From the IMG/VR virus record IMGVR_UViG_3300037297_000066, positions 62,001 through 126,000 of that record: a stretch of 64,000 nt of DNA; one strand, written 5' to 3'. Position numbers and translations under genes: made by a program. The notes beneath the pieces were generated by a model, which worked only from the letters and a program-made list of their open reading frames with translations, made no database searches and was not told the origin of the DNA. Positions 37,436-54,240 of this stretch are shown in pieces. Each line of letters opens with the position of its first letter. Within the stretch, counting starts at the first letter, position 1.

Positions 37436-37642
37436 GGTGTACAGTAGGGGAGCGAAGCCATTTGCGAGAGGTTCAGTGGCAAGAGTTTCCTAGGGACCGC
37501 TCGAAAGTGTGTGTTCCTTGATAGTTAAACCCTGTTTCCTGCTGGTCAGAGTCTGGTGATATAGGGTCAGAAGACCAGAACTGGACAACCTATCGCAGAG
37601 TCCTGTCCAAAGGTCTGATCTGACACCCCCATTTAGGGGTGG
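37436..37642 (+). promoter_or_regulatory. CRISPR leader 1 with class B promoter motif
   Basis: Near-identical to 46955-47161; starts with GGTGTACAGT; abuts the first repeat. Confidence 0.8.
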
Positions 37643-39603
37643 GTCGAGGGAGGAAAATCCTCTCTCGGGAGTTCCAACCTCAGCATGCCTTAGCCGGCGA
37701 GGAAGACCAACACCAGGTCGAGGGAGGAAAATCCTCTCTCGGGAGTTCCAACTCGTCCCTGCCTCTCGTGAGTTGGGATGCACTGTGCGTCGAGGGAGGA
37801 AAATCCTCTCTCGGGAGTTCCAACGCACTAGCGTACGTGTCCTCGGTGGAGCAGGCGGAGGTCGAGGGAGGAAAATCCTCTCTCGGGAGTTCCAACACGA
37901 GGCTTCGGGCTCGCTGGTCCGGGCTGACGTTCGTCGAGGGAGGGTGATCCTCCCTCGGGAGTTCCAACACCGTTCCATCCCCCTGGTGAACCCAACACGG
38001 AACACGTCGAGGGAGAAAAATCCTCTCTCGGGAGTTCCAACGCACTCGTCCACTGCACCGATAGGGGGCTACCCGTATAGTCGAGGGAGGAAAATCCTCC
38101 CTCGGGAGTTCCAACGGCGAGGTCGAGGATCGCCCCCTGCACTACATCCGGGTCGAGGGAGGGGGATCCTCCCTCGGGAGTTCCAACGATGATCGAGATA
38201 TCCCGGGCCACCCTCAGACCAGCTGTCGAGGGAGGGGTTTCCTCCCTCGGGAGTTTCAAGCCACCATGGGTAGACGCGCCAAGCACGCAAGTCGAGGGAG
38301 GGGGATCCTCCCTCGGGAGTTCCAAGCACGTGCCCGGCACTGGCGACGATTCCCGCTTCGATGTCGAGGGAGGGCAATCCTCTCTCGGGAGTTCCAACAA
38401 TGCACCAGTCGTTGACGACGTTCGCTCCAGGTCGAGGGAGGGGGATCCTCCCTCGGGAGTTCCAACTCCTCCCAGCCCCTGAACTGGGCCTCCACTGCCT
38501 GCAGGTCGAGGGAGGGTCCTCCTCCCTCGGGAGTTCCAACCCGTCACCGCTCGGAGAGACGACCATCACCCAAAGGGTCGAGGGAGGGTGATCCTCCCTC
38601 GGGTGTTCCAAGTGGACGCTCCACCGAATCCACGCCACGAGCGAGTGAAGTCGAGGGAGGGGGATCCTCCCTCGGGAGTTCCAACTGCGGGATCTTTGAG
38701 AATGCGGGGGGTCTGTAGTCTGGTCGAGGGAGGGAAATCCTCTCTCGGGAGTTCCAACATCTCCATTCTTTCGGGTTTCGGATGTGAATCTCTTGGGTCG
38801 AGGGAGGGAAATCCTCTCTCGGGAGTTCCAACCTCACCTTGCGATGCCTGTCGGCCGTCACGAGGGCCATGTCGAGGGAGGGAAATCCTCTCTCGGGAGT
38901 TCCAAGATCTGGCTCTTCGCCCCGGACTTCCTGGTACTGAGCGGTCGAGGGAGGGTTTTCCTTCCTCGGGAGTTCCAAGCAGAAGCTCGTGGACGCTGCC
39001 GTGCCTGCCGATCCCGTGTCGAGGGAGGGGGATCCTCCCTCGGGAGTTTCAATCAGACGGATGACGGTCGCGAGGCCCAGTCGAGGGAGGGTCCTCCTCC
39101 CTCGGGAGTTCTAAGAATCGGACGCTAGGGCCATCGCCCCCATAGCCTGTCGAGGGAGGGGTTTCCTCCCTCGGGAGTTTCAAGCCGGATGATGAGGCGA
39201 GGCTCATCAGCGATGTCGAGGGAGGGAGATCCTCCCTCGGGAGTTTCAACCGATCCCACCACCTCTGAGCGAGGCCGATGGCCATGTCGAGGGAGGGGTT
39301 TCCTCTTTCAGGAGTTCCAAGGCCGGGCCCGACGATCGCTTCGTGCAGCCCGACGACGGGTCGAGGGAGGGAAATCCTCTCTCGGGAGTTCCAAGCGAGA
39401 ACAACCGCATGTGGGTACCTGCCGCACCAGGGGTCGAGGGAGGGTCCTCCTCCCTCGGGAGTTCTAACGGGAGTTCAAAATCCACGGCCGGACGTTGTGA
39501 ATCGGTTGTCTGGTGCGTCGAGGGAGGGTGATCCTCCCTCGGGAGTTTCAATCAAGGCTTTTCGCTAATCGAGAGGGATCATTTCCCTCTCGGGAGTTTC
39601 AAT
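37643..39603 (+). CRISPR. CRISPR array 1: about 28 repeats (27 plus 1 degenerate terminal), ~36 nt, unique spacers mostly ~35-38 nt
   Basis: Consensus GTCGAGGGAGG-N5-CCTC(C/T)CTCGGGAGTT(C/T)CAA(C/G); ~73 nt period; degenerate repeat at the right end defines the trailer. Confidence 0.97.
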
Positions 39604-39709
39604 AAGCGATGCTGTCTCGTAAGTTGCTGAAATAACTAGACTACCCAAAAAAGTGTACGTTTAGAGAAAACCCTTGGAAGAATTCGTTCTAGTTGGTGTA
39701 CGGTAGGGC

Positions 39710-40393
39710 ATGCCTACCCCCCCACTAAAACGAGTCTACGTCAGAGCCTGGGCTGAGCTGGGTTGTTGGAACACTCTTTCCCAGCAAGCCGAGCGCATCT
39801 CCAACATCGTACCCACTCATTCGGCCGTTCGAGGTTTTCTACGATCCATCCTTGGGAAATGGGAAACCGACTACCAGGTCCACGAATGTTGGTTGCTCCG
39901 GGAGCCGGAGTTGACCTCCCATGTCGTTAGCGAGGTCAACTTCAAGCCTACGGTCAACCCGCAAAAGCCCGTTCACATTGAAGGGGCTCGCATCATGCGC
40001 ACGAACACGTGCTTGAGAAACCCGGACTATATGTTCGTGTTCACCCCCATGCGTAGTTGGTGGGGAGACAAGGTCTTCCAAAAGGATCCCACCGAGACTC
40101 ACGAAAAGAACTGGAACATGTCAGTGAGGCGGTTGAAGCACGGTAAGCAACACCGACCGCCCTACTTTGGGATGAGCGACTACCCCGCCTCCTATGAATA
40201 CGTTGACAAGCCTCAACTCAAGCCTGTTCCTGTCAACCGAAACCTCGGCATCATGTACTGGGGGATCGACTACGCAGATCCTCAAGAACCCAGCTACTAC
40301 ACCGCCCTGAGCGTTGTGGACGGTGTAGTCCGTTACCCAACGGTAGAAGAAGTCCGGAAGAACGGCCTCAAATTGACGGATAGGCGATCATGA
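39710..40393 (+). CDS. cas5: Type I-C Cas5 (Cas5d/Cas5c)
   Basis: ERISNIVPTHSAVRGFLRSILGK, SEV, RTNTCLRNPDY, RRLKHG...PYFG, NLGIMYWGIDY, VVDGVVRYP match the Cas5c pattern. Confidence 0.9.
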   Translation: MPTPPLKRVYVRAWAELGCWNTLSQQAERISNIVPTHSAVRGFLRSILGKWETDYQVHECWLLREPELTSHVVSEVNFKPTVNPQKPVHIEGARIMRTNTCLRNPDYMFVFTPMRSWWGDKVFQKDPTETHEKNWNMSVRRLKHGKQHRPPYFGMSDYPASYEYVDKPQLKPVPVNRNLGIMYWGIDYADPQEPSYYTALSVVDGVVRYPTVEEVRKNGLKLTDRRS

Positions 40394-42246
40394 TCACAGC
40401 TCTCTACTCGTTTGGTAAGAACCGGGGGCTGGGATTCGATCCCTACTTCCCCCTGAAGCCCCACTACTACCTTCGACTATCTTCTTCGGGATCCGTGCGA
40501 ATCGAACCCATCAAGGAACCTGAGATCCGCCTCCCAGAGAAGTCCGGACGAAGCAGCAACATCGAGGCCAACTTCCTGTACGACACGGCCATGTACGCTC
40601 TGGCCTTCAACGCCATCCGCAAAGAGCGCTTGCTGACTCAGTTCCTGACTTTTTGGGGCAAGACCCTGGAACATCTGACCAACTGCGAAGACGTGGAAGC
40701 ACTGAAAGCCGTGAAGGCATTCTGCGACCAACTGGCCTTGTCAGAAATCTGCTCCGCCGTGAGTCAATGGGAAAAGAGCTCCAAGAAGCGGCTAGTGAGC
40801 CTTAAAGGCCCGAACCGTATCTCGGGTCTTGCTGAGATCCGGAAGGGACTCTCCGAGGTGGCTTTGGAGACCTTCGAAAGTCTAGCCAGTGGAAAACCCC
40901 CGGCCCCCATTCAAAAGGCCATAGGAGATCTGGCTATAGAAGGAGAGCAGTGGGTCATACTGACTTTGGAGGATGACAACACGCCCCTAGCGCTCAGGCC
41001 CAAGCCTTCTGAGCTGTGGGTTCAGCTCCAAAAGCCTACTGACGACAAGCCCACCAGCACCTGCTTGCTCACAGGGAAACCTTGTAAACCAGTCCGACTA
41101 CACCGGGCTCTCAAGGGTGTACCTGGTGGGGACAAAGGGATTCCTCTCATCTCGTTCGAGCAAGAAGTGACCCGCTACAAGGGCCGCAAGAAGGAAGACA
41201 ACTTCCCCATCAGTCGAGAAGCTCACGACACGTATGTAGCGGCCTTCCGGCACATTGTAGATCAGGGGAATGTCTTCGTGAGCATCAACTCCTGCCTCTT
41301 GGTATGGGTAGATGAGGCCGAGCATGACGAGCTCCTAACCCCCCTGCTGACGGTCCTACGATCCAAGGAAAAGGAGGAGGTCAAAGCAGCCTGGGACGAA
41401 GTAGAACGTCTAGACAGCGACGTCACGGTGCATCTGGCCATGCTTCGTAGCTCCAAGGGCCGCATCTCCATCCTAGGCTATCACACGCTTTCCGTGAATC
41501 AGTTGAGGGCCAACCTTCTCCGATTCCACGAAGAGTTCTCCGAGTTCCCAGAGTACACCCCAAGAGGGTTATTTTCCTGGATGCTCAAGAAGAACATCAA
41601 GGGCAAGGACAAGGAAACAGCCAAGCTCTACACCATGGTGACTTTGGCCGTAGTACTAGGGACTCCTTACCCGTTACAGATCTTCCCTAGCCTCATCCAG
41701 TGGATCAAGAACACGGACAGTGCCCTGGACTTGTTCTTGCATCTTACCTGGCTGCGAGCCTACGTCTGCAGGGACTACGGTATTAACCCGCCTCCTATCA
41801 AAAACCCCTTTCAAAAGGAGCCCCTCGTGTGCGAACCACGCATTGAAGAGAACGTCAACCTCAACGAAACCGACATCGGATACAACCTTGGAAGACTGGT
41901 CGCCTTAGACTGCCATCTGCGCAGAATGACCGGCATCAGTGTCAGTGAGATTTCCGAGGTACGTTCAGCCACCAACAACCCTCACATGTACATCAGCCGG
42001 AGCTACCGGATGCTCCCCACGCTGGAGAAGCTGGAGAAGAAGGGATGGGGGAAGCCTCTCAGGGAGATGCGTGAAGAGGTCAAGGCCAAACTTGCTCCTC
42101 TCGTGGCTACTCCCATTCGTCTAACTCTCCTTGAAGAGTCCAGCTTTCAGATGGCCTTCACGTACCAGAAGACCTACCTTCGCCGCTACAACGCTTGGAG
42201 GAAGCAGCAGTACAAGGCCGCCAAGGCTGCTGAGGAAGAGAACTGA
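40390..42246 (+). CDS. cas8c: Type I-C large subunit Cas8c (Csd1)
   Basis: RSSNIEANFLYD, CLLTGK...RLHRALKGV...LISFE...NFPIS, KGRISI, GYNLGRLVAL; ATGA-coupled to cas5. Confidence 0.88.
   Translation: MITALYSFGKNRGLGFDPYFPLKPHYYLRLSSSGSVRIEPIKEPEIRLPEKSGRSSNIEANFLYDTAMYALAFNAIRKERLLTQFLTFWGKTLEHLTNCEDVEALKAVKAFCDQLALSEICSAVSQWEKSSKKRLVSLKGPNRISGLAEIRKGLSEVALETFESLASGKPPAPIQKAIGDLAIEGEQWVILTLEDDNTPLALRPKPSELWVQLQKPTDDKPTSTCLLTGKPCKPVRLHRALKGVPGGDKGIPLISFEQEVTRYKGRKKEDNFPISREAHDTYVAAFRHIVDQGNVFVSINSCLLVWVDEAEHDELLTPLLTVLRSKEKEEVKAAWDEVERLDSDVTVHLAMLRSSKGRISILGYHTLSVNQLRANLLRFHEEFSEFPEYTPRGLFSWMLKKNIKGKDKETAKLYTMVTLAVVLGTPYPLQIFPSLIQWIKNTDSALDLFLHLTWLRAYVCRDYGINPPPIKNPFQKEPLVCEPRIEENVNLNETDIGYNLGRLVALDCHLRRMTGISVSEISEVRSATNNPHMYISRSYRMLPTLEKLEKKGWGKPLREMREEVKAKLAPLVATPIRLTLLEESSFQMAFTYQKTYLRRYNAWRKQQYKAAKAAEEEN
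41827..42246 (+). CDS. cas11: Putative internally translated Cas11c (139 aa)
   Basis: In-frame GTG with AAGGAG 6 nt upstream, shortly before the GYNLGRL helix. Confidence 0.55.
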   Translation: MCEPRIEENVNLNETDIGYNLGRLVALDCHLRRMTGISVSEISEVRSATNNPHMYISRSYRMLPTLEKLEKKGWGKPLREMREEVKAKLAPLVATPIRLTLLEESSFQMAFTYQKTYLRRYNAWRKQQYKAAKAAEEEN

Positions 42247-42378
42247 TCGTTCAGACAACGGAACGCAGACTTTTGCCGAAAAGTACCGCTACAAGGGTTG
42301 ATTAACCCTCAGGTACTTCAGGTATCAGGAGGTATCTCCTGGGAGTCATCTAGATCGAAATCAAAACAGGAGGGCCTC

Positions 42379-43386
42379 ATGGCTCATTCATCGTATCCAA
42401 AAAACAATGACACCAACGTTTCTATCGTCCCCAACCGAATGGAGATCGTGACTCTCACGGAATATCGGGACGGCACTCCCCAACTGGCGCCTGACGAAAA
42501 CGGCACTCGTCAGGATCCCTTCTCTGGTCAAGGCTTGATCACGGGAGTGGGTACCAAGCGCAAGATTCGGGACTTCGCAGCCCTGCTCGGCCAGTCTCTC
42601 TACGTGGCCCGTCGAGCCGTCTTGAGCCACGCCGTCAACGAAGCAGCTCAAGCCCTGGGGGTGGAAGCCGATGCCAACCAGGAGGAAGAAAGCCCTCCCA
42701 TCGACGAGGACAAGGAAACCGAGCCCGAGCCCAAGAGCAAGGGCAAGAGCAAGGGCAAGAGCAAGGCCAAGGGCAAGGCCAAGAAGGAAAAGAACAAGGA
42801 GCTCGATTACGAAGTTGCCCTGAAGGTCAGGGATGAACTGTGCCGACGGTACTGGGACATCCGGGCATTTGGGGCCGTTCTGTGCAGCCCCGTGAACATC
42901 CCCGTTCGAGGGCCTCTCCAAGTTGGGATGGCCAGGTCTGTGGATCCGATCAACCCCCTCACGCTCTCTATCACCCGGGTCGCTGTGGCTACGGACCGAG
43001 AAGCGGAGGAGCAGAAAGGGCGCAACCACACGATGGGCACCCAGACGGTCGTTCCCTACGGGGTCTACCAGCAACACCACTACTACAACCCCCACGACGC
43101 CGAGGTCACGGGCTTCTCCCAGGAAGACTTTGAGATCTACCTCAGGGCTCTCAGGGAGATGCATGACCACACCAGGTCATGCATGCGGACTGAGGTGGTT
43201 CCTAGGAAGATCGTCATCTTCCGGCACAGCTGCCCTTTGGGCAACGCTCCCAGCCACAAGCTGTTCGAGTTGGTCAAGTTGACCAAGAAGCCGGGGGTTC
43301 CTACCCCCACCTGTTGGGAGGACTACGAGTTCAGCGTGGACGTAGAAAATCTACCTGAAGGGGTGGAAATCGAAGTCATCGGCTGA
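42379..43386 (+). CDS. cas7: Type I-C Cas7 (Csd2)
   Basis: ITGVGTKRKIRD, YWDIRAFGAV, VRGPLQV, SITRVAV, TMG...VPYGVY, TGFSQED, LGNAPSHKLF; GGAGG RBS before ATG 42379. Confidence 0.92.
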   Translation: MAHSSYPKNNDTNVSIVPNRMEIVTLTEYRDGTPQLAPDENGTRQDPFSGQGLITGVGTKRKIRDFAALLGQSLYVARRAVLSHAVNEAAQALGVEADANQEEESPPIDEDKETEPEPKSKGKSKGKSKAKGKAKKEKNKELDYEVALKVRDELCRRYWDIRAFGAVLCSPVNIPVRGPLQVGMARSVDPINPLTLSITRVAVATDREAEEQKGRNHTMGTQTVVPYGVYQQHHYYNPHDAEVTGFSQEDFEIYLRALREMHDHTRSCMRTEVVPRKIVIFRHSCPLGNAPSHKLFELVKLTKKPGVPTPTCWEDYEFSVDVENLPEGVEIEVIG

Positions 43387-43395
43387 CCCCGTGGT

Positions 43396-43433
43396 GTATG
43401 GTGGGAGAGACGAGAAAGCCTCTCCCACCATAC
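43396..43433. other. Perfect 14-bp inverted repeat between cas7 and the helicase
   Basis: GTATGGTGGGAGAG-N10-CTCTCCCACCATAC; no U-tract. Confidence 0.85.
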
Positions 43434-43445
43434 CAGGTCCTAGAA

Positions 43446-45470
43446 ATGCCTAGAAGAATCACTCTCCACAACTTCCAGAGCAGAGACGCTAACCGCCTCT
43501 GCCCTCGGTTCGTTGACCACAAGGTCTTCGCTATCATCTACGCTACTGGAGCAGGCAAGACCTTGGAGATAAGGGCCATCGTTTCTAGGCTGTACCACCA
43601 CCGATACGATCCTGAATACAAGGGGTTCAGTTTCACTCACTGTATTTTTGCGGCCCCCCAACGAGTCATCCGAGACAACTTCATTGAGGACATCTCCGAA
43701 CTGGTGGACGGAAACCTAGTCTACCCCTGTCTCAATGTCGTCACCAACGTAAGTCGAGAGGACCTGGAAAGGTTCCTGGGGCAACGCTGGACCGTAGACC
43801 GTATGTGTATGGCGGTCACCCACAGTATCATCGTAAGGCTGATCCCATGGTTGGAAGAGGCCCTGCGTCAAGACCCTAGCTTTCTCGTGGGAAAAATCCT
43901 GGTTATAGACGAAGCTCACCACATTCCGGCCAAGAGGCTGGCCCAACTGTGTCGGTTATGGAAAGACCACGGTGGACATCTGGTACTCCTGACCGCCACC
44001 CCCAGCCATCCTGACATCGAAAAAGTCATCCCTGACAATGCCATCGTAGCTTGCAGAACTCTGCCGGAGCAGATGGAAGGCGGAAAGTACGCCCCCCAGA
44101 TCCTTGAGACCGGTATCATCAACGTCACCGGAGAGGGGTACTCGGACAAGGAGATGTGTGGGATCCCCGTAGACGCAGACACCGCCATTCAGGAGATTGT
44201 AGACGACTACGAAAAGCAATGCCTGGAAGCCAAATGCAAGCCTCGGGCCCTGGTAATCATCCGACCTCGTAAGACCAGAGAAGAGAACCGGAAGATCATT
44301 GAGCGCTTCCTAGAGTGCTTTGAAGCGAAGGGGGACCTGAACGGTCTCGGGAAGATCCGGCCCGTAGTTGGAGTAGGGGCACACAAGTCGGTTATAGGGG
44401 ATGTGTCTGACTGCATCGCTCACGACAAAGCGATTCATTCAGGGGAGCAATGCACCTGCTCGAAGTGCCGAGGGCTCCCGTACCGGAGACTGACCTTCAA
44501 AGACTCCAACTACGATGTCCTGATTCTGATTGGCCGAGGACGAGAAGGGCTGGATACCGTTCTAGCCAGTCACATGTACCTGTTCGGCCTATGCCACTTC
44601 TTGCCTTCGGTGGGGCAGCTTCTGGGACGCATTATGCGTTGGCGTAAAGAGGTTCTCGACTACCCTGACAAGTGGCGGAACAGATCCTACCTCCGCATCA
44701 TCACGGCCGGAGTCAAAAATCTGGCAGCCCACAGTCAGCAGGTACTGTTGACTATGCACTACCTCAACCTCCTAGGCTTGCAACAGTGGAGTGTCCTGAG
44801 CCTAGTCAGCCGAATTGTTGACAAGATGGCTTCAAAGGCAGGCCACCCTCGACTCGGTGGAAAGCGTATTCCCTACATCACCTTGGAGAAGCGAGCCGCC
44901 ATTCTCACCTACCATAGTGAGATGATGAAGTGGTACAACGAAGGCTCTTCTCAGAATGAGCGAAATCACGGGGCCCCCCTCAACAAAGTACTGACTCGTA
45001 ATGAGCAGGCTAAGCTCACACTCAGTAGGATAGAGTTGGGTTGCCTCAGGCTAAAAGGAGCCCCTAAGGACAAGATCACCGAAGCAGAGATCCTCTTGGT
45101 CCTCACTGACCTTGAAGCCTCCTTCCACCGTGAGCAAAAAGAGGCCCTCCAAAGAGAGTTGTGGAAAGCCTTGGAAGAGCTGTTGCCCGAGGAAGGGGTG
45201 ATGAGTGCCGTCAACAGAGCTCTGGTTCAAGTGGCCTCCTCATTCCGAGAAGCCACTCTAAGCTACTCCCTGCTTGCCAGCCGGGTTCAACAGGAAATCC
45301 TGAGCTTGACTACTGAGCATATTGAAGACTTCTCAGCCCGCTTGGACGAGGCCCTCAAGAACAGCACGGCTCAAGCAGAAAAGAAACTGGAGACCCGCTA
45401 CGGGTACTCCCCCGGAACCTTGGAGACGTTCCGAAGAACCATAGCCAACCACCCGCCGGGTGTAAGATGA
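43446..45470 (+). CDS. SF2 DEAH helicase, restriction-enzyme/RadD-like rather than Cas3; no HD domain
   Basis: YATGAGKT ~30 aa from the start, IDEAHH, LTATP, GREGLD, QLLGRIMR; Cys-rich insert CTCSKC. The alternative start 43398 lies inside the hairpin. Confidence 0.85.
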   Translation: MPRRITLHNFQSRDANRLCPRFVDHKVFAIIYATGAGKTLEIRAIVSRLYHHRYDPEYKGFSFTHCIFAAPQRVIRDNFIEDISELVDGNLVYPCLNVVTNVSREDLERFLGQRWTVDRMCMAVTHSIIVRLIPWLEEALRQDPSFLVGKILVIDEAHHIPAKRLAQLCRLWKDHGGHLVLLTATPSHPDIEKVIPDNAIVACRTLPEQMEGGKYAPQILETGIINVTGEGYSDKEMCGIPVDADTAIQEIVDDYEKQCLEAKCKPRALVIIRPRKTREENRKIIERFLECFEAKGDLNGLGKIRPVVGVGAHKSVIGDVSDCIAHDKAIHSGEQCTCSKCRGLPYRRLTFKDSNYDVLILIGRGREGLDTVLASHMYLFGLCHFLPSVGQLLGRIMRWRKEVLDYPDKWRNRSYLRIITAGVKNLAAHSQQVLLTMHYLNLLGLQQWSVLSLVSRIVDKMASKAGHPRLGGKRIPYITLEKRAAILTYHSEMMKWYNEGSSQNERNHGAPLNKVLTRNEQAKLTLSRIELGCLRLKGAPKDKITEAEILLVLTDLEASFHREQKEALQRELWKALEELLPEEGVMSAVNRALVQVASSFREATLSYSLLASRVQQEILSLTTEHIEDFSARLDEALKNSTAQAEKKLETRYGYSPGTLETFRRTIANHPPGVR

Positions 45471-46183
45471 ACCTTGTAAAATTCAACAAACAGCCCTGGA
45501 GGTTGCGAACCTTTCAGAGCATGCGTAGTGAAAGCAGATTGTGGGATGGGTTTAAGCTGCGAGGGATCTACGCAGAGATGACAGCTCTTTCTGGCCACGA
45601 AATGTACCTCATCCTAAAAGAACACAAGGCTCTTGAAAAGCCTTACTACTTCGTAGGCTCTGATCTCAATGTGAAAGTCTACGTAGAACTCAGGGAAGAC
45701 AAGGAACGTGGGAAAATCCCGTGGACGGTAGCCTTCGGGGACATCATTCAAGTAGTCCAACAGATCATCCACAACAAGGATGGCCTCCCTGTTGCCGTTC
45801 TGAACATGGATGGGTTTGATCAGGTAGGGGGAAGCAAGTGGTGGAGTGAGACGGCCTCCCCCCTCGTAGAGATTGTCGAGGATTCCGTCAGGCGTCTAGG
45901 CAGTTTCATGTTGATTCTCAACAAGACCCTCGACACCCGAACCAAGAGTGATCCACTAGAGGCTTTGAGAACCCAGACGGCCCTCCTTTGCAAGGTCTTC
46001 GGCAAACGTTGGCCCTTGAGTCATAGCGACATCGTAACAGACATCCCCCCAGAAGTAGCCAACCGCAGCTTCGTAGGAGACGTGGGCGCCTTCCAGATCT
46101 ACAAGAGCAAAGGACGCCAGCTTCGAATGGCTACCTTGAGACTGGCTTTTCAACCCAGAAGAATTGTGGCCAAGCTTAGCTAG
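45467..46183 (+). CDS. Hypothetical, possible class I SAM-dependent methyltransferase-like fold
   Basis: Strand order YAEMTALSG / FVGSDLN / AFGDI / VLNMDGF mirrors motifs I-IV; ATGA-coupled to the helicase. Confidence 0.5.
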   Translation: MNLVKFNKQPWRLRTFQSMRSESRLWDGFKLRGIYAEMTALSGHEMYLILKEHKALEKPYYFVGSDLNVKVYVELREDKERGKIPWTVAFGDIIQVVQQIIHNKDGLPVAVLNMDGFDQVGGSKWWSETASPLVEIVEDSVRRLGSFMLILNKTLDTRTKSDPLEALRTQTALLCKVFGKRWPLSHSDIVTDIPPEVANRSFVGDVGAFQIYKSKGRQLRMATLRLAFQPRRIVAKLS

Positions 46184-46211
46184 TAACCCAACCCATAACC
46201 AGAGGAATCCG

Positions 46212-46421
46212 ATGTCCAAATCCAAAGACAGCTTCAACTCCGACGTCGTTCTCACGTTCGCCCAAAAGGCCAAGCGCTTCACGACTCAAGGTGTAGCAGG
46301 ACGCTTCAAGGTCCCCAAGCAGAGGGCCGCAGCGTGTATCGCCATCCTTCGTATCAAGGAAGTGGTCGAGTCCGACGGCAAGACCAGAGACGGCGACAGC
46401 AAGTGGGTCTACTGCGGGTAA
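46212..46421 (+). CDS. Small winged-helix DNA-binding-like protein
   Basis: AGAGGA RBS; FTTQGVAGRFKVPKQRAAACIAILRIKEVV plus a C-terminal beta hairpin. Confidence 0.55.
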   Translation: MSKSKDSFNSDVVLTFAQKAKRFTTQGVAGRFKVPKQRAAACIAILRIKEVVESDGKTRDGDSKWVYCG

Positions 46422-46714
46422 TTAGGCTCCACCATCGAAAACCTGTCCCGATCTTGATGGGGCATGACGCCCAAAAGGCGTTCCCAAGCTGTACGGGGAA
46501 CCTCTGGCTTCTTAGGTAAAGGCGTAGGAGCCGGAGGGAGCCCCGCTGATAGCCTTTTGTTCCGGTGGTACTCGTTGTCCACCCAGGACACGAAACGCCT
46601 TAGGGAGGGCTCCAGACGGTGTTCTCGGAGCTTTTCTCGGGCTTCGAACAAGAGACAGACGATGTCCTTCTGTTCTCGAAGGGTCAGTTGGCTAAACATG
46701 TAGGATAACGACAT
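46409..46714 (-). CDS. Hypothetical with W-tag (RTAWERLL)
   Basis: GTG-TAGGTA-N5-ATG start. Confidence 0.6.
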   Translation of the reverse strand: MSLSYMFSQLTLREQKDIVCLLFEAREKLREHRLEPSLRRFVSWVDNEYHRNKRLSAGLPPAPTPLPKKPEVPRTAWERLLGVMPHQDRDRFSMVEPNYPQ

Positions 46715-46773
46715 ACCCTTACCTACACTGGCCTACACTTAGTGTCAAGTCCTACTTGTGGTACTCTCAGGGC

Positions 46774-46947
46774 ATGAAGATAGACGGCAAACAGCTATGT
46801 CTGGCCTGCGGGACGAACGTGGCCACCCGGATGGACGGGACAGTCCCCCTCTGTGACTCGTGTGCAAGTCACGTCACAGACCGACGAGGGGTCCGATTCG
46901 ACAACCCTCGCCTCACGAAGGACGAAATTCCTCCAAACGTTCACTAG
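46774..46947 (+). CDS. Small Zn-finger protein
   Basis: CLAC...CDSC; TG-G-TACTCT-N6-ATG. Confidence 0.55.
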   Translation: MKIDGKQLCLACGTNVATRMDGTVPLCDSCASHVTDRRGVRFDNPRLTKDEIPPNVH

Positions 46948-46954
46948 GTGGTTT

Positions 46955-47161
46955 GGTGTACAGTAGGGGAGCGAAGCCATTTGCGAGAGGTTCAGTGCTA
47001 CCCGTAGCCTAGGGACCGCTCGAAAGTGTGTGTTCCTTGATAGTTAAACCCTGTTTCCTGCTGGTCAGAGCCTGGTGATACAGGGTCAGAAGATCAGAGC
47101 TGGACAACCTATCGCAGAGTTCTGTCCAAAGGTCTGATCTGACACCCCTATTTAGGGGTGA
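46955..47161 (+). promoter_or_regulatory. CRISPR leader 2 (duplicate of leader 1)
   Basis: Same sequence apart from one 11-nt block and about 7 scattered substitutions. Confidence 0.8.
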
Positions 47162-49116
47162 GTCGAGGGAGGGCAATCCTCTCTCGGGAGTTTCAACGAG
47201 CGACAACATCGTGCGGACCGTCGCCAGCTGCAACGTCGAGGGAGGGGGATCCTCCCTCGGGAGTTTCAACCGGGGCAGCTACCTTCCTTTCGAGCGGTAC
47301 ACGTTGGGTCGAGGGAGGGGATCCTCCCTCGGGAGTTTCAACGTAGCTCACGTAGGCGTTCTCGGAATCGCCGGTACCTCGTCGAGGGAGGGTCCTCCTC
47401 CCTCGGGAGTTCCAAGCAGCTACTCGACGCTTTGGGCAAGCCGAATGACATCAAGTCGAGGGAGGAAAATCTTCCCTCGGGAGTTCCAAGGAGCTCGGGT
47501 CCAGGTGACTCAGACTGGTACATCTGGGTCGAGGGAGGGGATCCTCCCTCGGGAGTTCCAAGTAGGTAGTGCTCGACTGGCGTGGTCATTCGGCCTCTAC
47601 GTCGAGGGAGGGGATCCTCCCTCGGGAGTTCCAAGTGGACCACCTCGGGTGGCAGTCGCCCCGATACTAGGGTCGAGGGAGGAAAATCTTCCCTCGGGAG
47701 TTCCAAGAGATCGTCGGACATCACACCACCTCCAGCAGCTGCGAGGTCGAGGGAGGAAAATCTTCCCTCGGGAGTTCCAAGGAACGAAACTGACGGATAC
47801 TCAGCCAGCGCGTTAACGGTCGAGGGAGGGGGATCCTCCCTCGGGTGTTTCAACGAAGGACGGACACAGCAAGCCACGGACAGAGGTCGAGGGAAGGAAA
47901 TCCTCCCTCGGGAGTTCCAACTGACCCGCCTTTCGGGCAAGAGCCGCCTGGCTCGTCGAGGGAGGGTGATCCTCCCTCGGGAGTTTCAACCCGAACGCGG
48001 TAGTGGCAGCCGTGCCCCACCCCACGTCGAGGGAGGGTCCTCCTCCCTCGGGAGTTCCAACACCATATCGAAGGGAGCAGAAGCCATGAAGCAGAGTCGA
48101 GGGAGGAAAATCTTCCCTCGGGAGTTCCAAGGTACGCGAGCCTCGCGACGGTTCTGACCACAGGTGTCGAGGGAGGAAAATCTTCCCTCGGGAGTTCCAA
48201 GTCGGGGTAACGCCGTTGGCCTTGCGGCGAGTCGAGGGAGGGGTTTCCTCCCTCGGGAGTTCCAAGAGTTTGCTCAGCCGGGGTGGGTGCGTCGGAGTGC
48301 GTAGTCGAGGGAGGGGTTTCCTCCCTCGGGAGTTCCAAGATCAGCGTTCAGCGCCCATGAGATTTGATCGTGATGAGTCGAGGGAGGGTCCTCCTCCCTC
48401 GGGAGTTCCAAGTCGGGACCAGTGCCCCAGACCGCGCTGAAGTTGATGTCGAGGGAGGAAAATCTTCCCTCGGGAGTTCCAAGAGAAGCCTCGTCCCCCT
48501 TCTCCCTTTCTTCTTCCAGCGTCGAGGGAGGGGGATCCTCCCTCGGGAGTTTCAACTAAAGACCGCCGCGTCTTCCAGTTCCGCCACGAGCGGTCGAGGT
48601 AGGGGGATCCTCCCTCGGGAGTTTCAAGTTGTACACGGTGGTCGTCCCCACCTTGAGGGCACGGTCGAGGGAGGAAAATCTTCCCTCGGGAGTTCCAAGG
48701 AGGACTACCAGGCGAGGCAGGCCAAGGACGTGTTCAAGGTCGAGGGAGGGGGATCCTCCCTCGGGAGTTCCAAGACGCCCGGACCTGACGAGCCCGTAGT
48801 CCCTCCAGAAGTCGAGGGAGGGAAATACTCCCTCGGGAGTTCCAAGAGCGCCCTGATGCGTCTGGATGAAAGCTTCGCTGCCGTCGAGGGAGGAAAATCC
48901 TCCCTCGGGAGTTCCAAGAGGACGGACGACGGACGCCATTCTGTCGCTTGCTTCTTGTCGAGGGAGGGTCCTCCTCCCTCGGGAGTTCCAAGAGCTAGTC
49001 ATCCCACGGGCGTTCCGTTCGACTCGAAGTCGAGGGAGGGGGATCCTCCCTCGGGAGTTCCAAGAATGTCAGGAAGCAGTGTCGAGGGAGGGAGATCCTT
49101 CCTCGGGAATTTCAAT
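47162..49116 (+). CRISPR. CRISPR array 2: about 28 repeats, same repeat family as array 1
   Basis: Counted by eye; last spacer is only ~16 nt and the last repeat is degenerate (GAATTTCAAT). Confidence 0.97.
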
Positions 49117-53003: not shown

Positions 53004-53411
53004 TTGATTCCCAAAGTCGGCTCCTGGTGGCGAACCAAGAGCGCCCAGTGGCCCAGTACGGCTTTTTTACTCACAGGCTTCAGGGACGTCTTCCACGAGG
53101 TGGTTTCCATCACTGAAGAGGACGTCTGCCTGATCCAAAACGGAGCGGACCGGCCCTACTTCATCCCCAAAGACGAATTCGACCAAGGAAAGTTCAAGCC
53201 TTTCCGGCCCCGAGGCTCAATACCTTCGTGGGTGAGACCGGGGGTCCTTTTTCGTAGACCCCGGGGAAAAACCTGGACAGTCACGACGGTTCGAGGAAGG
53301 TTCTTCACCGCCGAGATCAGGTACGGCACCTTTCGGTTCTTCAGTCCTGACGAGATTTCGAACTTACGGCCGTACCTGACGTGGCACGAGCGACTTCTAT
53401 CTACAGATTGA
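53004..53411 (+). CDS. Hypothetical with W-tag variant (LTWHERLL)
   Basis: Two SH3-like repeats; tag. Confidence 0.6.
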   Translation: MIPKVGSWWRTKSAQWPSTAFLLTGFRDVFHEVVSITEEDVCLIQNGADRPYFIPKDEFDQGKFKPFRPRGSIPSWVRPGVLFRRPRGKTWTVTTVRGRFFTAEIRYGTFRFFSPDEISNLRPYLTWHERLLSTD

Positions 53412-54240
53412 GGAACTGCGAGCTTCCCTCGTTCGGCCGAGCGTGGAGATAGCGGCTAGTAGTCGCCACGTTGGCGTGCCCGAGGGTTGCTTGCACGAGG
53501 TGTATGGGGGCCCCGTTGTCCAGGGCATGGCTAGCATGAGCGTGACGCAGCCAGTGAGGGGAAGCCTTCTCGCCGATGGCATCAGCGGTCTCGTAGATGA
53601 TCTGCCGAGCTTCTCGGACACACAGAGGGTTGCCTCGCCGGCTCTTGAACACGAGGCTATGGTCGGTGTCGTTCTTCCAACGAAGTTTTCGGAGCTCGTT
53701 GACGAACTGGGCAGAGAGCTTGACGGTTCGGGTCTTACCGCCCTTCCCGTGGAAGGTGACCCTGTCGATGCTCAGGTCCGCCCATGTAAGGTTCACGGTT
53801 TCGGTGATACGGGATCCCGCCGCATATAGCAGCTTGATGAGCAGGTAGTTGCGGCCAGGCTCTGCTGCGGCCAGCAATCCCTGAACGGTTTCCTCGTTCA
53901 GGATTCTCTCGTGGAGAGTGTCTCTCACTGAGGGGGCCTTCAGGATGAGGGCCACGTTGAACACCGTGTAGCCGGTCTGGTGAGCGTACTTCATGAGGCT
54001 CTTGACCGAGCGGATCCGGCGGGCCTTCGTCGCTGGGGAGCCCACCAGGGATTCAGCATAGCGAACCACGTGGTCCACCTTGGCTTCCTGAAGACCTACA
54101 TTCTCCGACTCTAGGAACTCCAAGAACATCTGGGCATCCCGGGAGTACGCTATGGCTGTATTTTCAGGACGACCCGACAGCCAAAGTTGAACCAAATGCT
54201 TGTCGGAAGTAGCGCCGGAGTAGTTTTCAGGAAGCCGCAT
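53401..54240 (-). CDS. Tyrosine recombinase, XerC/XerD-like
   Basis: GSRITE (R), GKGGK (K), PHWLRHAHASH, LGHANVATTSRY (HxxR, H, Y). Confidence 0.95.
   Translation of the reverse strand: MRLPENYSGATSDKHLVQLWLSGRPENTAIAYSRDAQMFLEFLESENVGLQEAKVDHVVRYAESLVGSPATKARRIRSVKSLMKYAHQTGYTVFNVALILKAPSVRDTLHERILNEETVQGLLAAAEPGRNYLLIKLLYAAGSRITETVNLTWADLSIDRVTFHGKGGKTRTVKLSAQFVNELRKLRWKNDTDHSLVFKSRRGNPLCVREARQIIYETADAIGEKASPHWLRHAHASHALDNGAPIHLVQATLGHANVATTSRYLHARPNEGSSQFLNL

What the first reader, a model, noticed from the sequence alone, without database searches (positions are those of the whole stretch)
37643..49116. CRISPR repeats are hypervariable in the loop but structurally invariant, with variants interleaved in both arrays
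Seen: the loop varies among AAAAT, GAAAT, GGGAT, GTGAT, GTCCT, GGTTT, GCAAT, GAGAT, GTTTT and a 4-nt GGAT. Most stem changes are tolerated as G-U pairs (CCTCTCTC, CTTCCCTC). The tail varies TTCCAA/TTTCAA, and the next base is C or G (T in a few trailer-end repeats) but never A. The same variants recur non-adjacently and in both arrays. The geometry GU + 9-bp stem + 11-nt tail matches the known Cas5c cleavage giving an 11-nt 5' handle. Established: Cas1-Cas2 copies the leader-proximal repeat, which normally gives near-identical repeats. Inference: arrays built or shuffled by recombination between repeat-spacer units, or selected for repeat diversity to resist deletion in a recombinogenic phage.
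Basis: partly seen in the sequence, partly recalled or inferred. Interest (0 to 1): 0.7.

Follow-up and report, generated by a model that had tools for sequence, protein, structure and literature searches.

The report
Patchwork repeats in phage CRISPR arrays
A complete 437-kb phage carries two CRISPR arrays whose repeats, unlike normal near-identical ones, come in 26 versions that keep the same RNA hairpin, and sibling sequences show the arrays being reshuffled by recombination in a phage with no spacer-adding genes.

Summary
Two co-oriented arrays (27+1 and 28 repeats) flank a cas5c-cas8c-cas7-helicase operon in a complete 437-kb phage genome. The 55 repeats fall into 26 variants. Internal repeats differ from consensus at 75-81 sites per 1000 nt, against about 4 per 1000 published for type I-C. 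Loop positions 12-15 hold about 57% of the differences. The 9-bp stem stays paired in 98% of cells, and recurrent stem changes are all C-to-U giving G-U. Independent contigs from other runs and samples reproduce the variants, so they are not artefacts. Order is not leader-to-trailer drift. Sibling contigs show 2- and 3-unit indels, the same spacers flanked by a different repeat variant, a hybrid leader joining array-1 content to the array-2 position, and an array-1 spacer joined to array-2 units. Best reading: without leader-end re-copying, RNA-level selection keeps the Cas5c-type hairpin and 11-nt handle, the unread loop drifts, and recombination between repeats, leaders and arrays mixes the variants. 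Selection for diversity as deletion protection is possible but not supported by the arrangement. The system is the known huge-phage type I-C variant; the repeat mosaic is new.

The parts
37436..37642 (+). Leader of array 1
   Evidence: About 207 bp is 93% identical to the stretch upstream of array 2, and the similarity ends upstream of it.
37643..39552 (+). CRISPR array 1: 27 repeats of 36 nt in 16 variants, with 26 unique spacers (mostly 35-38 nt)
   Evidence: The four leader-proximal repeats are identical.
39469..39481 (+). Degenerate second copy of the repeat tail at the start of a 48-nt 'spacer', leaving a normal 36-nt spacer behind it
   Evidence: Seen directly in the sequence. Also present in sibling L021.
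39568..39603 (+). Vestigial terminal repeat with a different stem sequence but the same 9-bp hairpin and tail
   Evidence: Three compensatory base-pair changes relative to the main repeat.
39710..40393 (+). cas5c-like gene (227 aa)
   Evidence: Pfam Cas_Cas5d 36 bits. PADLOC Cas5c 80 bits. Aligns over its full length to the D. vulgaris Cas5c structure 8dex. Only the catalytic Lys is conserved.
40390..42246 (+). cas8c/csd1 (618 aa), very divergent
   Evidence: Pfam Cas_Csd1 172 bits. Only three clusters of this clade exist among 1.84 billion representatives.
42298..43386 (+). cas7/csd2 (362 aa from the TTG start; JGI aa)
   Evidence: NCBIfam TIGR02589 225 bits, above the cut-off.
43398..45470 (+). 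SF2 helicase (690 aa) in the place of Cas3, without an HD nuclease domain
   Evidence: Pfam ResIII/DEAD starts at residue 24. No Cas3_HD anywhere in the genome. No PDB relative by sequence.
45467..46183 (+). 238-aa protein of unknown function with a methyltransferase-like fold, overlapping the helicase stop
   Evidence: ESM Atlas structure matches to class I methyltransferases, TM 0.55-0.6. 29% identical to the gene at the same position in L025.
46955..47161 (+). Leader of array 2
47162..49116 (+). CRISPR array 2: 28 repeats (three of 35 nt) in 15 variants, with 27 unique spacers; the last spacer is only 16 nt and the last repeat is degenerate

Best explanation
These are two paralogous CRISPR arrays of an adaptation-less, phage-borne type I-C variant system.

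How the RNA is probably used (inferred, not shown). Each array is transcribed rightward from a conserved leader. Each repeat folds into a 9-bp hairpin. [quoted passage not shown] Cas5c, Cas8c and Cas7 are expected to assemble on the guide, with an SF2 helicase standing where Cas3 normally does.

Why the repeats differ. Selection on the RNA keeps the stem (G-U pairs allowed) and the handle. The loop, which Cas5c enzymes do not read, is free to change. The phage has no Cas1-Cas2-Cas4, so the arrays are rarely rebuilt from the leader end and lack the constant re-copying of one repeat that keeps ordinary arrays uniform. In age they behave like one long 'trailer end'.

Why the variants are interleaved. 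What does change the arrays is homologous recombination, gene conversion or slippage. It acts between repeats, between the two 93%-identical leaders, between the two arrays, and between co-infecting relatives. It deletes or inserts blocks of 2-3 units, moves units between arrays, and swaps a repeat's variant in place. Loop variants are therefore mostly neutral tags that expose a mosaic history.

Short runs of identical repeats (four, three and several pairs) are footprints of occasional ordinary spacer integration. That integration was presumably done by a host Cas1-Cas2 acting in trans; this step is inferred.
For: Shown:
- Anatomy and gene content.
- No Cas1, Cas2, Cas4, Cas3_HD or reverse transcriptase in the complete genome, which has direct terminal repeats and is rated 100% complete.
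- A RecA-family gene is present.
- The hairpin is kept in all variants and 98.4% of stem cells pair.
- Recurrent stem changes are only C-to-U on the 3' arm. These would be A-C mismatches on the opposite strand, so selection acts on + strand RNA.
- The vestigial repeat carries three compensatory pairs.
- Loop sites vary about tenfold more than other sites (0.42 against 0.04 per site).
- Published work states that Cas5c processing tolerates pentaloop mutations but not changes at the stem base or 3' overhang (PMC8524198).
- Loop and 3'-arm variants are tightly linked (p<5e-5) and identical neighbours are enriched (p=0.004). Variants are therefore lineages by descent, not convergent mutations.
- Four-gamete failures occur at 15 of 55 site pairs.
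- There is no leader-to-trailer gradient in array 2.
- Mean Hamming distance within arrays (about 4.0-4.1) is close to that between arrays (4.26).

Population evidence:
- L021 is 99.77% identical across the cas operon but has three extra units and a different tail on the same spacer.
- An X3 contig lacks two units, with the junction in a 23-nt shared stretch.
- L029 has a clean hybrid leader, with the crossover in a 63-nt identical stretch, followed by array-1 units. Its eighth repeat has loop GGTTT instead of GGGAT between unchanged spacers.
- An X3 contig joins array-1 spacer 38541 to array-2 units at 47818-47990.
- X3 holds a third, mosaic leader haplotype.
- The indel sizes of 2-3 units match the published mean deletion block of 2.7 spacers (PMC11472070).
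Against: - A Cas1-less type I-C array on a plasmid-like contig (L031) still has 23 of 31 identical repeats. Lack of adaptation genes alone therefore does not force heterogeneity.
- Active gene conversion should homogenise repeats over time. Persistence of ten loop types needs great age, outside donors or selection.
- No transcript or processing data were available, and the Cas5 catalytic residues are not conserved.
- The hybrid-leader contig is short (1.4 kb) and a graph chimera through the 63-nt shared stretch cannot be fully excluded.
- No host adaptation module or host array with this repeat was found.
- No relative's array could be read for comparison. L025 and L035 both stop in their first repeat.
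Confidence: 0.55

Rival explanations
1. Repeat diversity is itself selected. In a phage that cannot re-acquire spacers and replicates with its own recombinase, arrays whose repeats share only short identical runs lose fewer spacers to slippage or recombination. Lineages with diversified loops and wobble positions therefore survive, as a natural counterpart of engineered non-repetitive arrays.
For: - The mean longest identical run between two repeats of one array is 17-19 nt instead of 36. Only 8-10% of pairs share 30 nt or more.
- Variable sites (12-15, 18, 21, 32, 36) are spread so that they break up the repeat.
- The phage has RecA and no Cas1-Cas2.
- The arrays are long for a phage, at 27-28 repeats against a published median of six (PMC7162821).
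- The literature already proposes that mutated repeats lower deletion of adjacent spacers (PMC12839519; PMC11472070).
- Diversity persists despite ongoing conversion.
Against: - Neighbouring repeats are more similar than chance, and repeats 2-6 units apart are no less similar than chance.
- The indels seen in siblings join non-identical repeats, using 12-23 nt of shared sequence.
- The varying sites are exactly those expected to be functionally free, so no extra selection is needed to explain where variation lies.
Confidence: 0.25
2. The arrays were assembled by capturing ready-made repeat-spacer blocks from several other arrays (host strains or related phages), each uniform for its own loop variant. 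Capture was by recombination rather than by spacer integration in the phage.
For: - Runs of identical repeats look like multi-unit blocks.
- Run X3 holds extra spacers absent from the window, flanked on both sides by the same variant (C-C and E-E).
- Position-36 T repeats, otherwise terminal, occur inside array 1 at 39018 and twice in L021. This is as expected if former array ends were joined.
- Related type I-C repeats of different species typically differ by a few bases (PMC8524198).
Against: - No array with this stem and tail was found in 185,579 species genomes, IMG/VR or JGI metagenomes. Near-identical records are masked in these scans.
- About 44 variant switches across 53 neighbour steps would need very many capture events.
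- The in-place loop change between unchanged spacers in L029 is not a capture event.
Confidence: 0.12
3. The variants are assembly or sequencing artefacts, or the order is ordinary leader-to-trailer drift.
For: Metagenome assemblies can be chimeric, and the population is heterogeneous. Array 1 shows a weak distance decay (Mantel r=0.22).
Against: - Independent contigs from other runs and another JGI sample reproduce the variants with their flanking spacers, with zero differences.
- Any word of 33 nt or more that covers the loop also covers a spacer or lies inside a single variant, so different variants cannot be joined through shared words.
- Multi-base linked variants recur at non-adjacent places and in both arrays.
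- Array 2 shows no gradient.
Confidence: 0.03
4. A targeted hypermutation process, such as a diversity-generating retroelement acting on adenines of an AAAAT template loop, diversifies the loops.
For: All loops can be written as changes at the A positions of AAAAT, with the final T invariant.
Against: - No reverse transcriptase is encoded in the complete genome.
- There are only ten loop states, mostly one step apart and linked to stem variants by descent.
- The other variable sites are C/T or C/G/T, not A.
- The sibling change produced an already existing variant rather than a random one.
Confidence: 0.02

Closest known systems
Huge-phage 'type I-C variant' CRISPR-Cas lacking Cas1/Cas2, with a helicase instead of Cas3 (Al-Shayeb et al. 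2020, PMC7162821)
   Same: It sits in a phage genome over 200 kb. It has Cas5d-like, Cas8c and Cas7 genes, no Cas6, no Cas1/Cas2/Cas4, a non-Cas3 helicase, and Cas5 active-site residues that depart from the canonical ones.
   Different: The published description does not mention heterogeneous repeats, and reports that phage arrays are small (median six repeats). Here there are two arrays of 27-28 repeats. A methyltransferase-fold gene follows the helicase. Direct sequence relatedness to the published phages was not tested, and a co-resident Cas12j was not looked for.
Canonical type I-C (Dvulg) CRISPR-Cas and its Cas5c-processed repeat
   Same: The repeat layout is a 2-nt 5' overhang, hairpin, 5-nt loop and 11-nt 3' overhang. 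The tail resembles the canonical handle and ends in AAC in many copies. Cas5c, Cas8c and Cas7 homologues are present.
   Different: The stem is 9 bp rather than 7, giving a 36-nt repeat rather than 32. There is no Cas3 HD, Cas4, Cas1 or Cas2. The gene order is cas5-cas8-cas7-helicase. Repeat variation is about 20 times the type I-C internal average.
Trailer-end repeat degeneration and repeat-misalignment deletions in ordinary arrays (PMC12839519; SpacerPlacer, PMC11472070)
   Same: The mutation density of these repeats (75-81 per 1000 nt) is like that of terminal type I-C repeats (55 per 1000). The block indels of 2-3 units match the published mean of 2.7.
   Different: Here the whole array, not just the last repeat, is in this state. 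The hairpin and handle remain intact. The variants recur as linked haplotypes in both arrays rather than as private decay.
Engineered non-repetitive guide arrays used to avoid recombination (my own knowledge, not checked here)
   Same: Repeats are kept functional but made non-identical, which shortens the homology available for deletion.
   Different: Those are designed. Here no selection for the property has been shown, and the arrangement does not minimise neighbour similarity.

Membership tests
CRISPR array | Regularly spaced direct repeats separated by unique spacers of similar length | tested here: met
   There are 55 repeats of 35-36 nt. Spacers are mostly 35-38 nt, all unique, with none matching the phage's own genome.
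CRISPR array | Conserved leader on one side, degenerate repeat on the other, and adjacent cas genes | tested here: met
   The two leaders are 93% identical over about 207 bp. Terminal repeats are degenerate. The cas operon lies between the arrays.
Type I-C CRISPR-Cas (canonical) | Cas5c, Cas8c and Cas7 effector genes | tested here: met
   Cas7 scores 225 bits, above the NCBIfam cut-off. Cas8c and Cas5 are above the Pfam cut-offs but below the NCBIfam equivalog cut-offs. PADLOC Cas5c scores 80 bits.
Type I-C CRISPR-Cas (canonical) | Cas3 with an HD nuclease plus helicase | tested here: not met
   The helicase core starts at residue 24. There is no Cas3_HD in the genome, and only a marginal partial Cas3e match (E 0.0098, 12.4 bits, no stretch passing) in PADLOC.
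Type I-C CRISPR-Cas (canonical) | Adaptation module Cas4-Cas1-Cas2 | tested here: not met
   None of the three families is found in the complete 437-kb genome, while the control genomes give hits.
Type I-C CRISPR-Cas (canonical) | Repeat with a 2-nt overhang, hairpin, pentaloop and 11-nt 3' overhang, cut by Cas5c at the stem base | tested here: inconclusive
   The geometry is met, with a 9-bp rather than 7-bp stem. Cleavage itself was not testable. Of the published Tyr-Lys-His triad only Lys aligns, although two canonical homologues fetched here also lack the Tyr and His.
Huge-phage type I-C variant (Al-Shayeb 2020) | Phage-borne; lacks Cas1/Cas2; helicase in place of Cas3; Cas5d-like protein as the presumed processing enzyme | tested here: met
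   The record is a virus with terminal repeats rated 100% complete. Phage genes are present in the window.
Huge-phage type I-C variant (Al-Shayeb 2020) | Sequence relatedness to the published phages' proteins, and a co-resident Cas12j system | not tested
The only relatives of this Cas8c found are L025 and L035.
Diversity-generating retroelement target | Reverse transcriptase and a template repeat with adenine-specific changes | tested here: not met
   No RVT_1 family hit in the genome.

The most novel reading that the evidence does not exclude
A phage that cannot add spacers keeps its immune memory by holding its CRISPR repeats in a deliberately non-identical but functionally equivalent state. 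Diversifying selection on the loop and on wobble positions would shorten the homology available for slippage and recombination. Exchange of units with the sister array and with co-infecting relatives would replace Cas1-Cas2 as the way arrays are renewed. This would be a natural counterpart of engineered non-repetitive arrays and a second, recombination-based mode of CRISPR array evolution.
Probability: 0.2. Interest if true: 0.75.

Novelty: new variant of a known kind. Interest (0 to 1): 0.55.

Why it matters
- Natural mutational scan. The arrays show which repeat positions a Cas5c-type system tolerates: the loop, G-U wobbles, and handle positions 7 and 11. Each variant sits in a presumably working guide.
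- Test case for a current hypothesis. It has been proposed that mutated repeats protect neighbouring spacers from deletion. Here that can be examined across whole arrays rather than only at the last repeat.
- Direct population evidence. The arrays of an adaptation-less phage system change by recombination between repeats, leaders and the two arrays. This bears on how phage-borne CRISPR systems without Cas1-Cas2 keep or renew their spacers.
- Practical use. The set of 26 interchangeable repeats could guide the design of stable multiplex type I-C arrays.

Tried and rejected
- crRNA unit as the unit of inheritance (tail of repeat i + spacer + hairpin of repeat i+1), which would hint at copying through RNA. 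Rejected. Position 32 is linked to the loop of its own repeat (p=0.002), not to the next repeat's loop (p=0.73).
- Shared backbone order of variants between the two arrays, as after an old array duplication. Rejected. The longest common subsequence of loop order is 13, against 12.8 by chance.
- Retroelement hypermutation. Rejected, because there is no reverse transcriptase.
- Spacer duplicates, self-targets or near-self targets. None beyond a shuffled null.
- Protospacers, wanted to read the PAM and test whether position 36 is PAM-derived. None in GenBank phages for either whole array. None in IMG/VR for the first spacer of each array.
- Other arrays with this repeat. None in IMG/VR, JGI metagenomes or GTDB species genomes; only single chance hits. 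Near-identical records are masked in those scans.
- Relatives of the Cas8c. Only two (L025, L035). Both contigs end inside their first repeat, so their arrays could not be read. Protein-pattern scans of viral and metagenome contigs found nothing.
- Three contigs of JGI sample 3300042731. They extend by about 1.6 kb, 2.0 kb and 0.7 kb into or towards the arrays, but the tool could not deliver their DNA.
- Cas5-repeat RNA complex prediction. Not folded by the tool, so it gives no evidence either way.
- Rfam. No CRISPR repeat family matched.
- Sigma-70 promoter scan of the leaders. Nothing found, and uninformative for a phage.
- Association of the TTT tail with shorter following spacers (33.6 against 36.4 nt, p=0.013). 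Noted but left unexplained.

Full report
**1. What is there**

The window is bases 62001-126000 of a single 437,331-bp virus record with direct terminal repeats, rated 100% complete. It comes from a wetland metagenome. The window holds phage genes such as an endolysin-like protein and an integrase.

Two CRISPR arrays lie on the + strand:
- Array 1: 37643-39552, 27 repeats, plus a vestigial repeat at 39568-39603.
- Array 2: 47162-49116, 28 repeats.

Between them lies an operon:
- cas5c-like (39710-40393)
- cas8c (40390-42246)
- cas7 (42298-43386)
- an SF2 helicase with no HD domain (43398-45470)
- a 238-aa protein with a methyltransferase-like fold (45467-46183)

Each array is preceded by about 207 bp of leader, and the two leaders are 93% identical to each other. 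No other array and no other copy of the repeat exists in the genome.

**2. Check of the observation**

There are 26 distinct 35-nt repeat cores among 55 repeats, and five variants occur in both arrays.

The layout is 2 nt, a 9-bp stem, a 5-nt loop and an 11-nt tail.
- Every variant folds into this hairpin.
- Among 34 distinct sequences (33 distinct repeats plus the vestigial repeat), 98.4% of stem cells pair.
- The stem variants that recur are all C-to-T on the 3' arm (positions 18, 20, 21, 22; 22 repeats), which give G-U in + strand RNA.
- The five changes that break a pair are singletons.
- On the opposite strand the same changes would be A-C mismatches, and the predicted energy drops more there. 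Selection therefore acts on the + strand transcript.
- The vestigial terminal repeat has three fully compensated pair changes.

Position 36 is never A (P about 6e-6), while the first spacer base is unbiased. It therefore behaves as a constrained repeat position.

Loop positions 12-15 carry about 57% of all differences, at 0.42 per site against 0.04 elsewhere.

No repeat equals the consensus. Internal repeats deviate at 75-81 per 1000 nt. Published means are 4.12 for internal and 55 for terminal type I-C repeats (PMC12839519). Two type I-C arrays fetched as controls were uniform apart from the trailer end. One of them also lacks Cas1-Cas2 and sits on a plasmid-like contig.

**3. Not an artefact**

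Logan contigs of four wetland runs reproduce stretches spanning two to four repeats with no difference. A JGI contig from another sample reproduces seven repeats of array 1 with their spacers.

A repeat is only 36 nt. Any assembly word of 33 nt or more that covers a loop therefore also covers spacer sequence or stays within one variant. Different variants cannot be stitched together by the assembler (my inference). Only contigs, not raw reads, were available for these runs.

**4. Order of variants**

The order is not a leader-to-trailer gradient. The Mantel correlation between sequence distance and position is 0.03 in array 2. It is 0.22 in array 1, where it is driven by four identical leader-end repeats. 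Repeats differ as much within an array as between arrays.

Variants are lineages, not convergent mutations. The loop and the 3'-arm variant are tightly linked, and identical neighbours are enriched (9 against 3.7 expected). These short runs are what ordinary duplicative spacer integration would leave.

Fifteen of 55 pairs of variable sites inside the repeat show all four combinations. This needs exchange within the repeat or recurrent mutation.

**5. Evidence from sibling sequences**

- L021 (another JGI sample) is 99.77% identical over 6.9 kb of the cas operon. It has three extra units before the last repeat of array 1. On the shared 48-nt spacer, the upstream repeat ends TTTCAAC instead of TTCTAAC.
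- A contig in run X3 lacks two units near the end of array 2. The junction lies in 23 nt shared by two different variants.
- L029 (a third JGI sample) starts in the sequence upstream of array 2. It then carries a leader that is array-2 type up to one point and array-1 type after a 63-nt identical stretch, and continues with array-1 units. Its eighth repeat has loop GGTTT where the window has GGGAT, between unchanged spacers.
- Another X3 contig joins array-1 spacer 38541 to array-2 units at 47818-47990.
- X3 also holds a third, mosaic leader haplotype.

The last three items are the kinds of product expected from exchange between the two directly oriented arrays.

The in-place changes produce variants that already exist elsewhere in the arrays. 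This points to conversion rather than point mutation (inference).

The indel sizes fit the published mean deletion block of 2.7 spacers (PMC11472070).

**6. Missing adaptation genes**

The complete genome has no Cas1, Cas2, Cas4 or Cas3 HD domain. It also has no reverse transcriptase, and it does encode a RecA-family protein.

This is the 'type I-C variant lacking Cas1 and Cas2 with a helicase instead of Cas3' already reported in huge phages (PMC7162821).

The Cas8c is very isolated. An exhaustive search of 1.84 billion representatives found only two related clusters. Both are in operons with the same gene order, and both contigs stop in their first repeat.

**7. Mechanism**

[quoted passage not shown] Processing is sensitive to the stem base and 3' overhang but not to the pentaloop (PMC8524198). 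The pattern of conservation here fits that exactly.

I infer three things:
- The loop is close to neutral.
- The arrays are old and seldom rebuilt from the leader.
- Recombination among repeats, leaders and arrays mixes the variants.

Cleavage by this Cas5 is not shown, because only the catalytic lysine aligns.

**8. The anti-deletion idea**

Heterogeneity does cut the mean longest identical run between repeats to 17-19 nt, and the idea has precedent for terminal repeats. Against it, near neighbours are not less alike than chance, and the observed indels join unlike repeats. It remains possible but unsupported.

**9. Verdict**

- The recombination reading is supported.
- The selection reading is open.
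- The system type is known.
- The pervasive, hairpin-preserving repeat mosaic was not found described in the literature I searched.

Noticed in passing
window 45467-46183: A 238-aa protein overlaps the helicase stop codon and has no Pfam, NCBIfam, PHROG or PADLOC hit. Its Atlas model resembles class I SAM methyltransferases (TM 0.55-0.6). A 29%-identical gene sits at the same place in the only two related operons (L025, L035). It may be a conserved extra component of this type I-C variant.
   Followed up: partly
window 39568-39603: A vestigial repeat lies 15 nt after array 1. It keeps the 9-bp hairpin and the tail but has three compensatory stem changes, so it looks like an older repeat lineage. 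The common CCTCTCTC arm variant shares one of its changes as a G-U intermediate.
   Followed up: partly
window 39469-39481; L021 1-25: A degenerate second copy of the 12-nt repeat tail sits in front of a normal 36-nt spacer, which makes an apparent 48-nt spacer. It is shared with the sibling contig and looks like the footprint of an aberrant join.
   Followed up: no
window 39018, 39517, 49081; L021 207 and 278: Repeats ending in T at position 36 are followed by CA or CAA, and by CAAGGC twice in L021. They mark array ends, yet one lies inside array 1, followed by the shortest internal spacer (26 nt). This suggests former array ends that were joined or duplicated.
   Followed up: partly
window arrays, position 32: Repeats with the TTTCAA tail are followed by shorter spacers than those with TTCCAA (mean 33.6 against 36.4 nt, p=0.013). 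This is unexplained.
   Followed up: no
G000:C1:322168-322980 (outside the window): The phage encodes a RecA-family recombinase (151 bits, 480-aa open frame).
   Followed up: no
window 53401-54240 (- strand): A tyrosine integrase gene lies about 4 kb downstream of array 2 in a 437-kb phage with terminal repeats.
   Followed up: no
window 42731-42784: A 6/12-nt tandem repeat (CAAGGG-like, about 9 copies) lies inside the cas7 reading frame. The cas7 start is called differently in different assemblies (315, 335 or 362 aa).
   Followed up: no
L031 11256-13400: A plasmid-like contig with TraC/TraG-type genes carries a Cas1-less type I-C locus with a Cas3-like helicase lacking an HD hit. Its 31-repeat array is uniform except at the trailer end. 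It served here as a control.
   Followed up: partly
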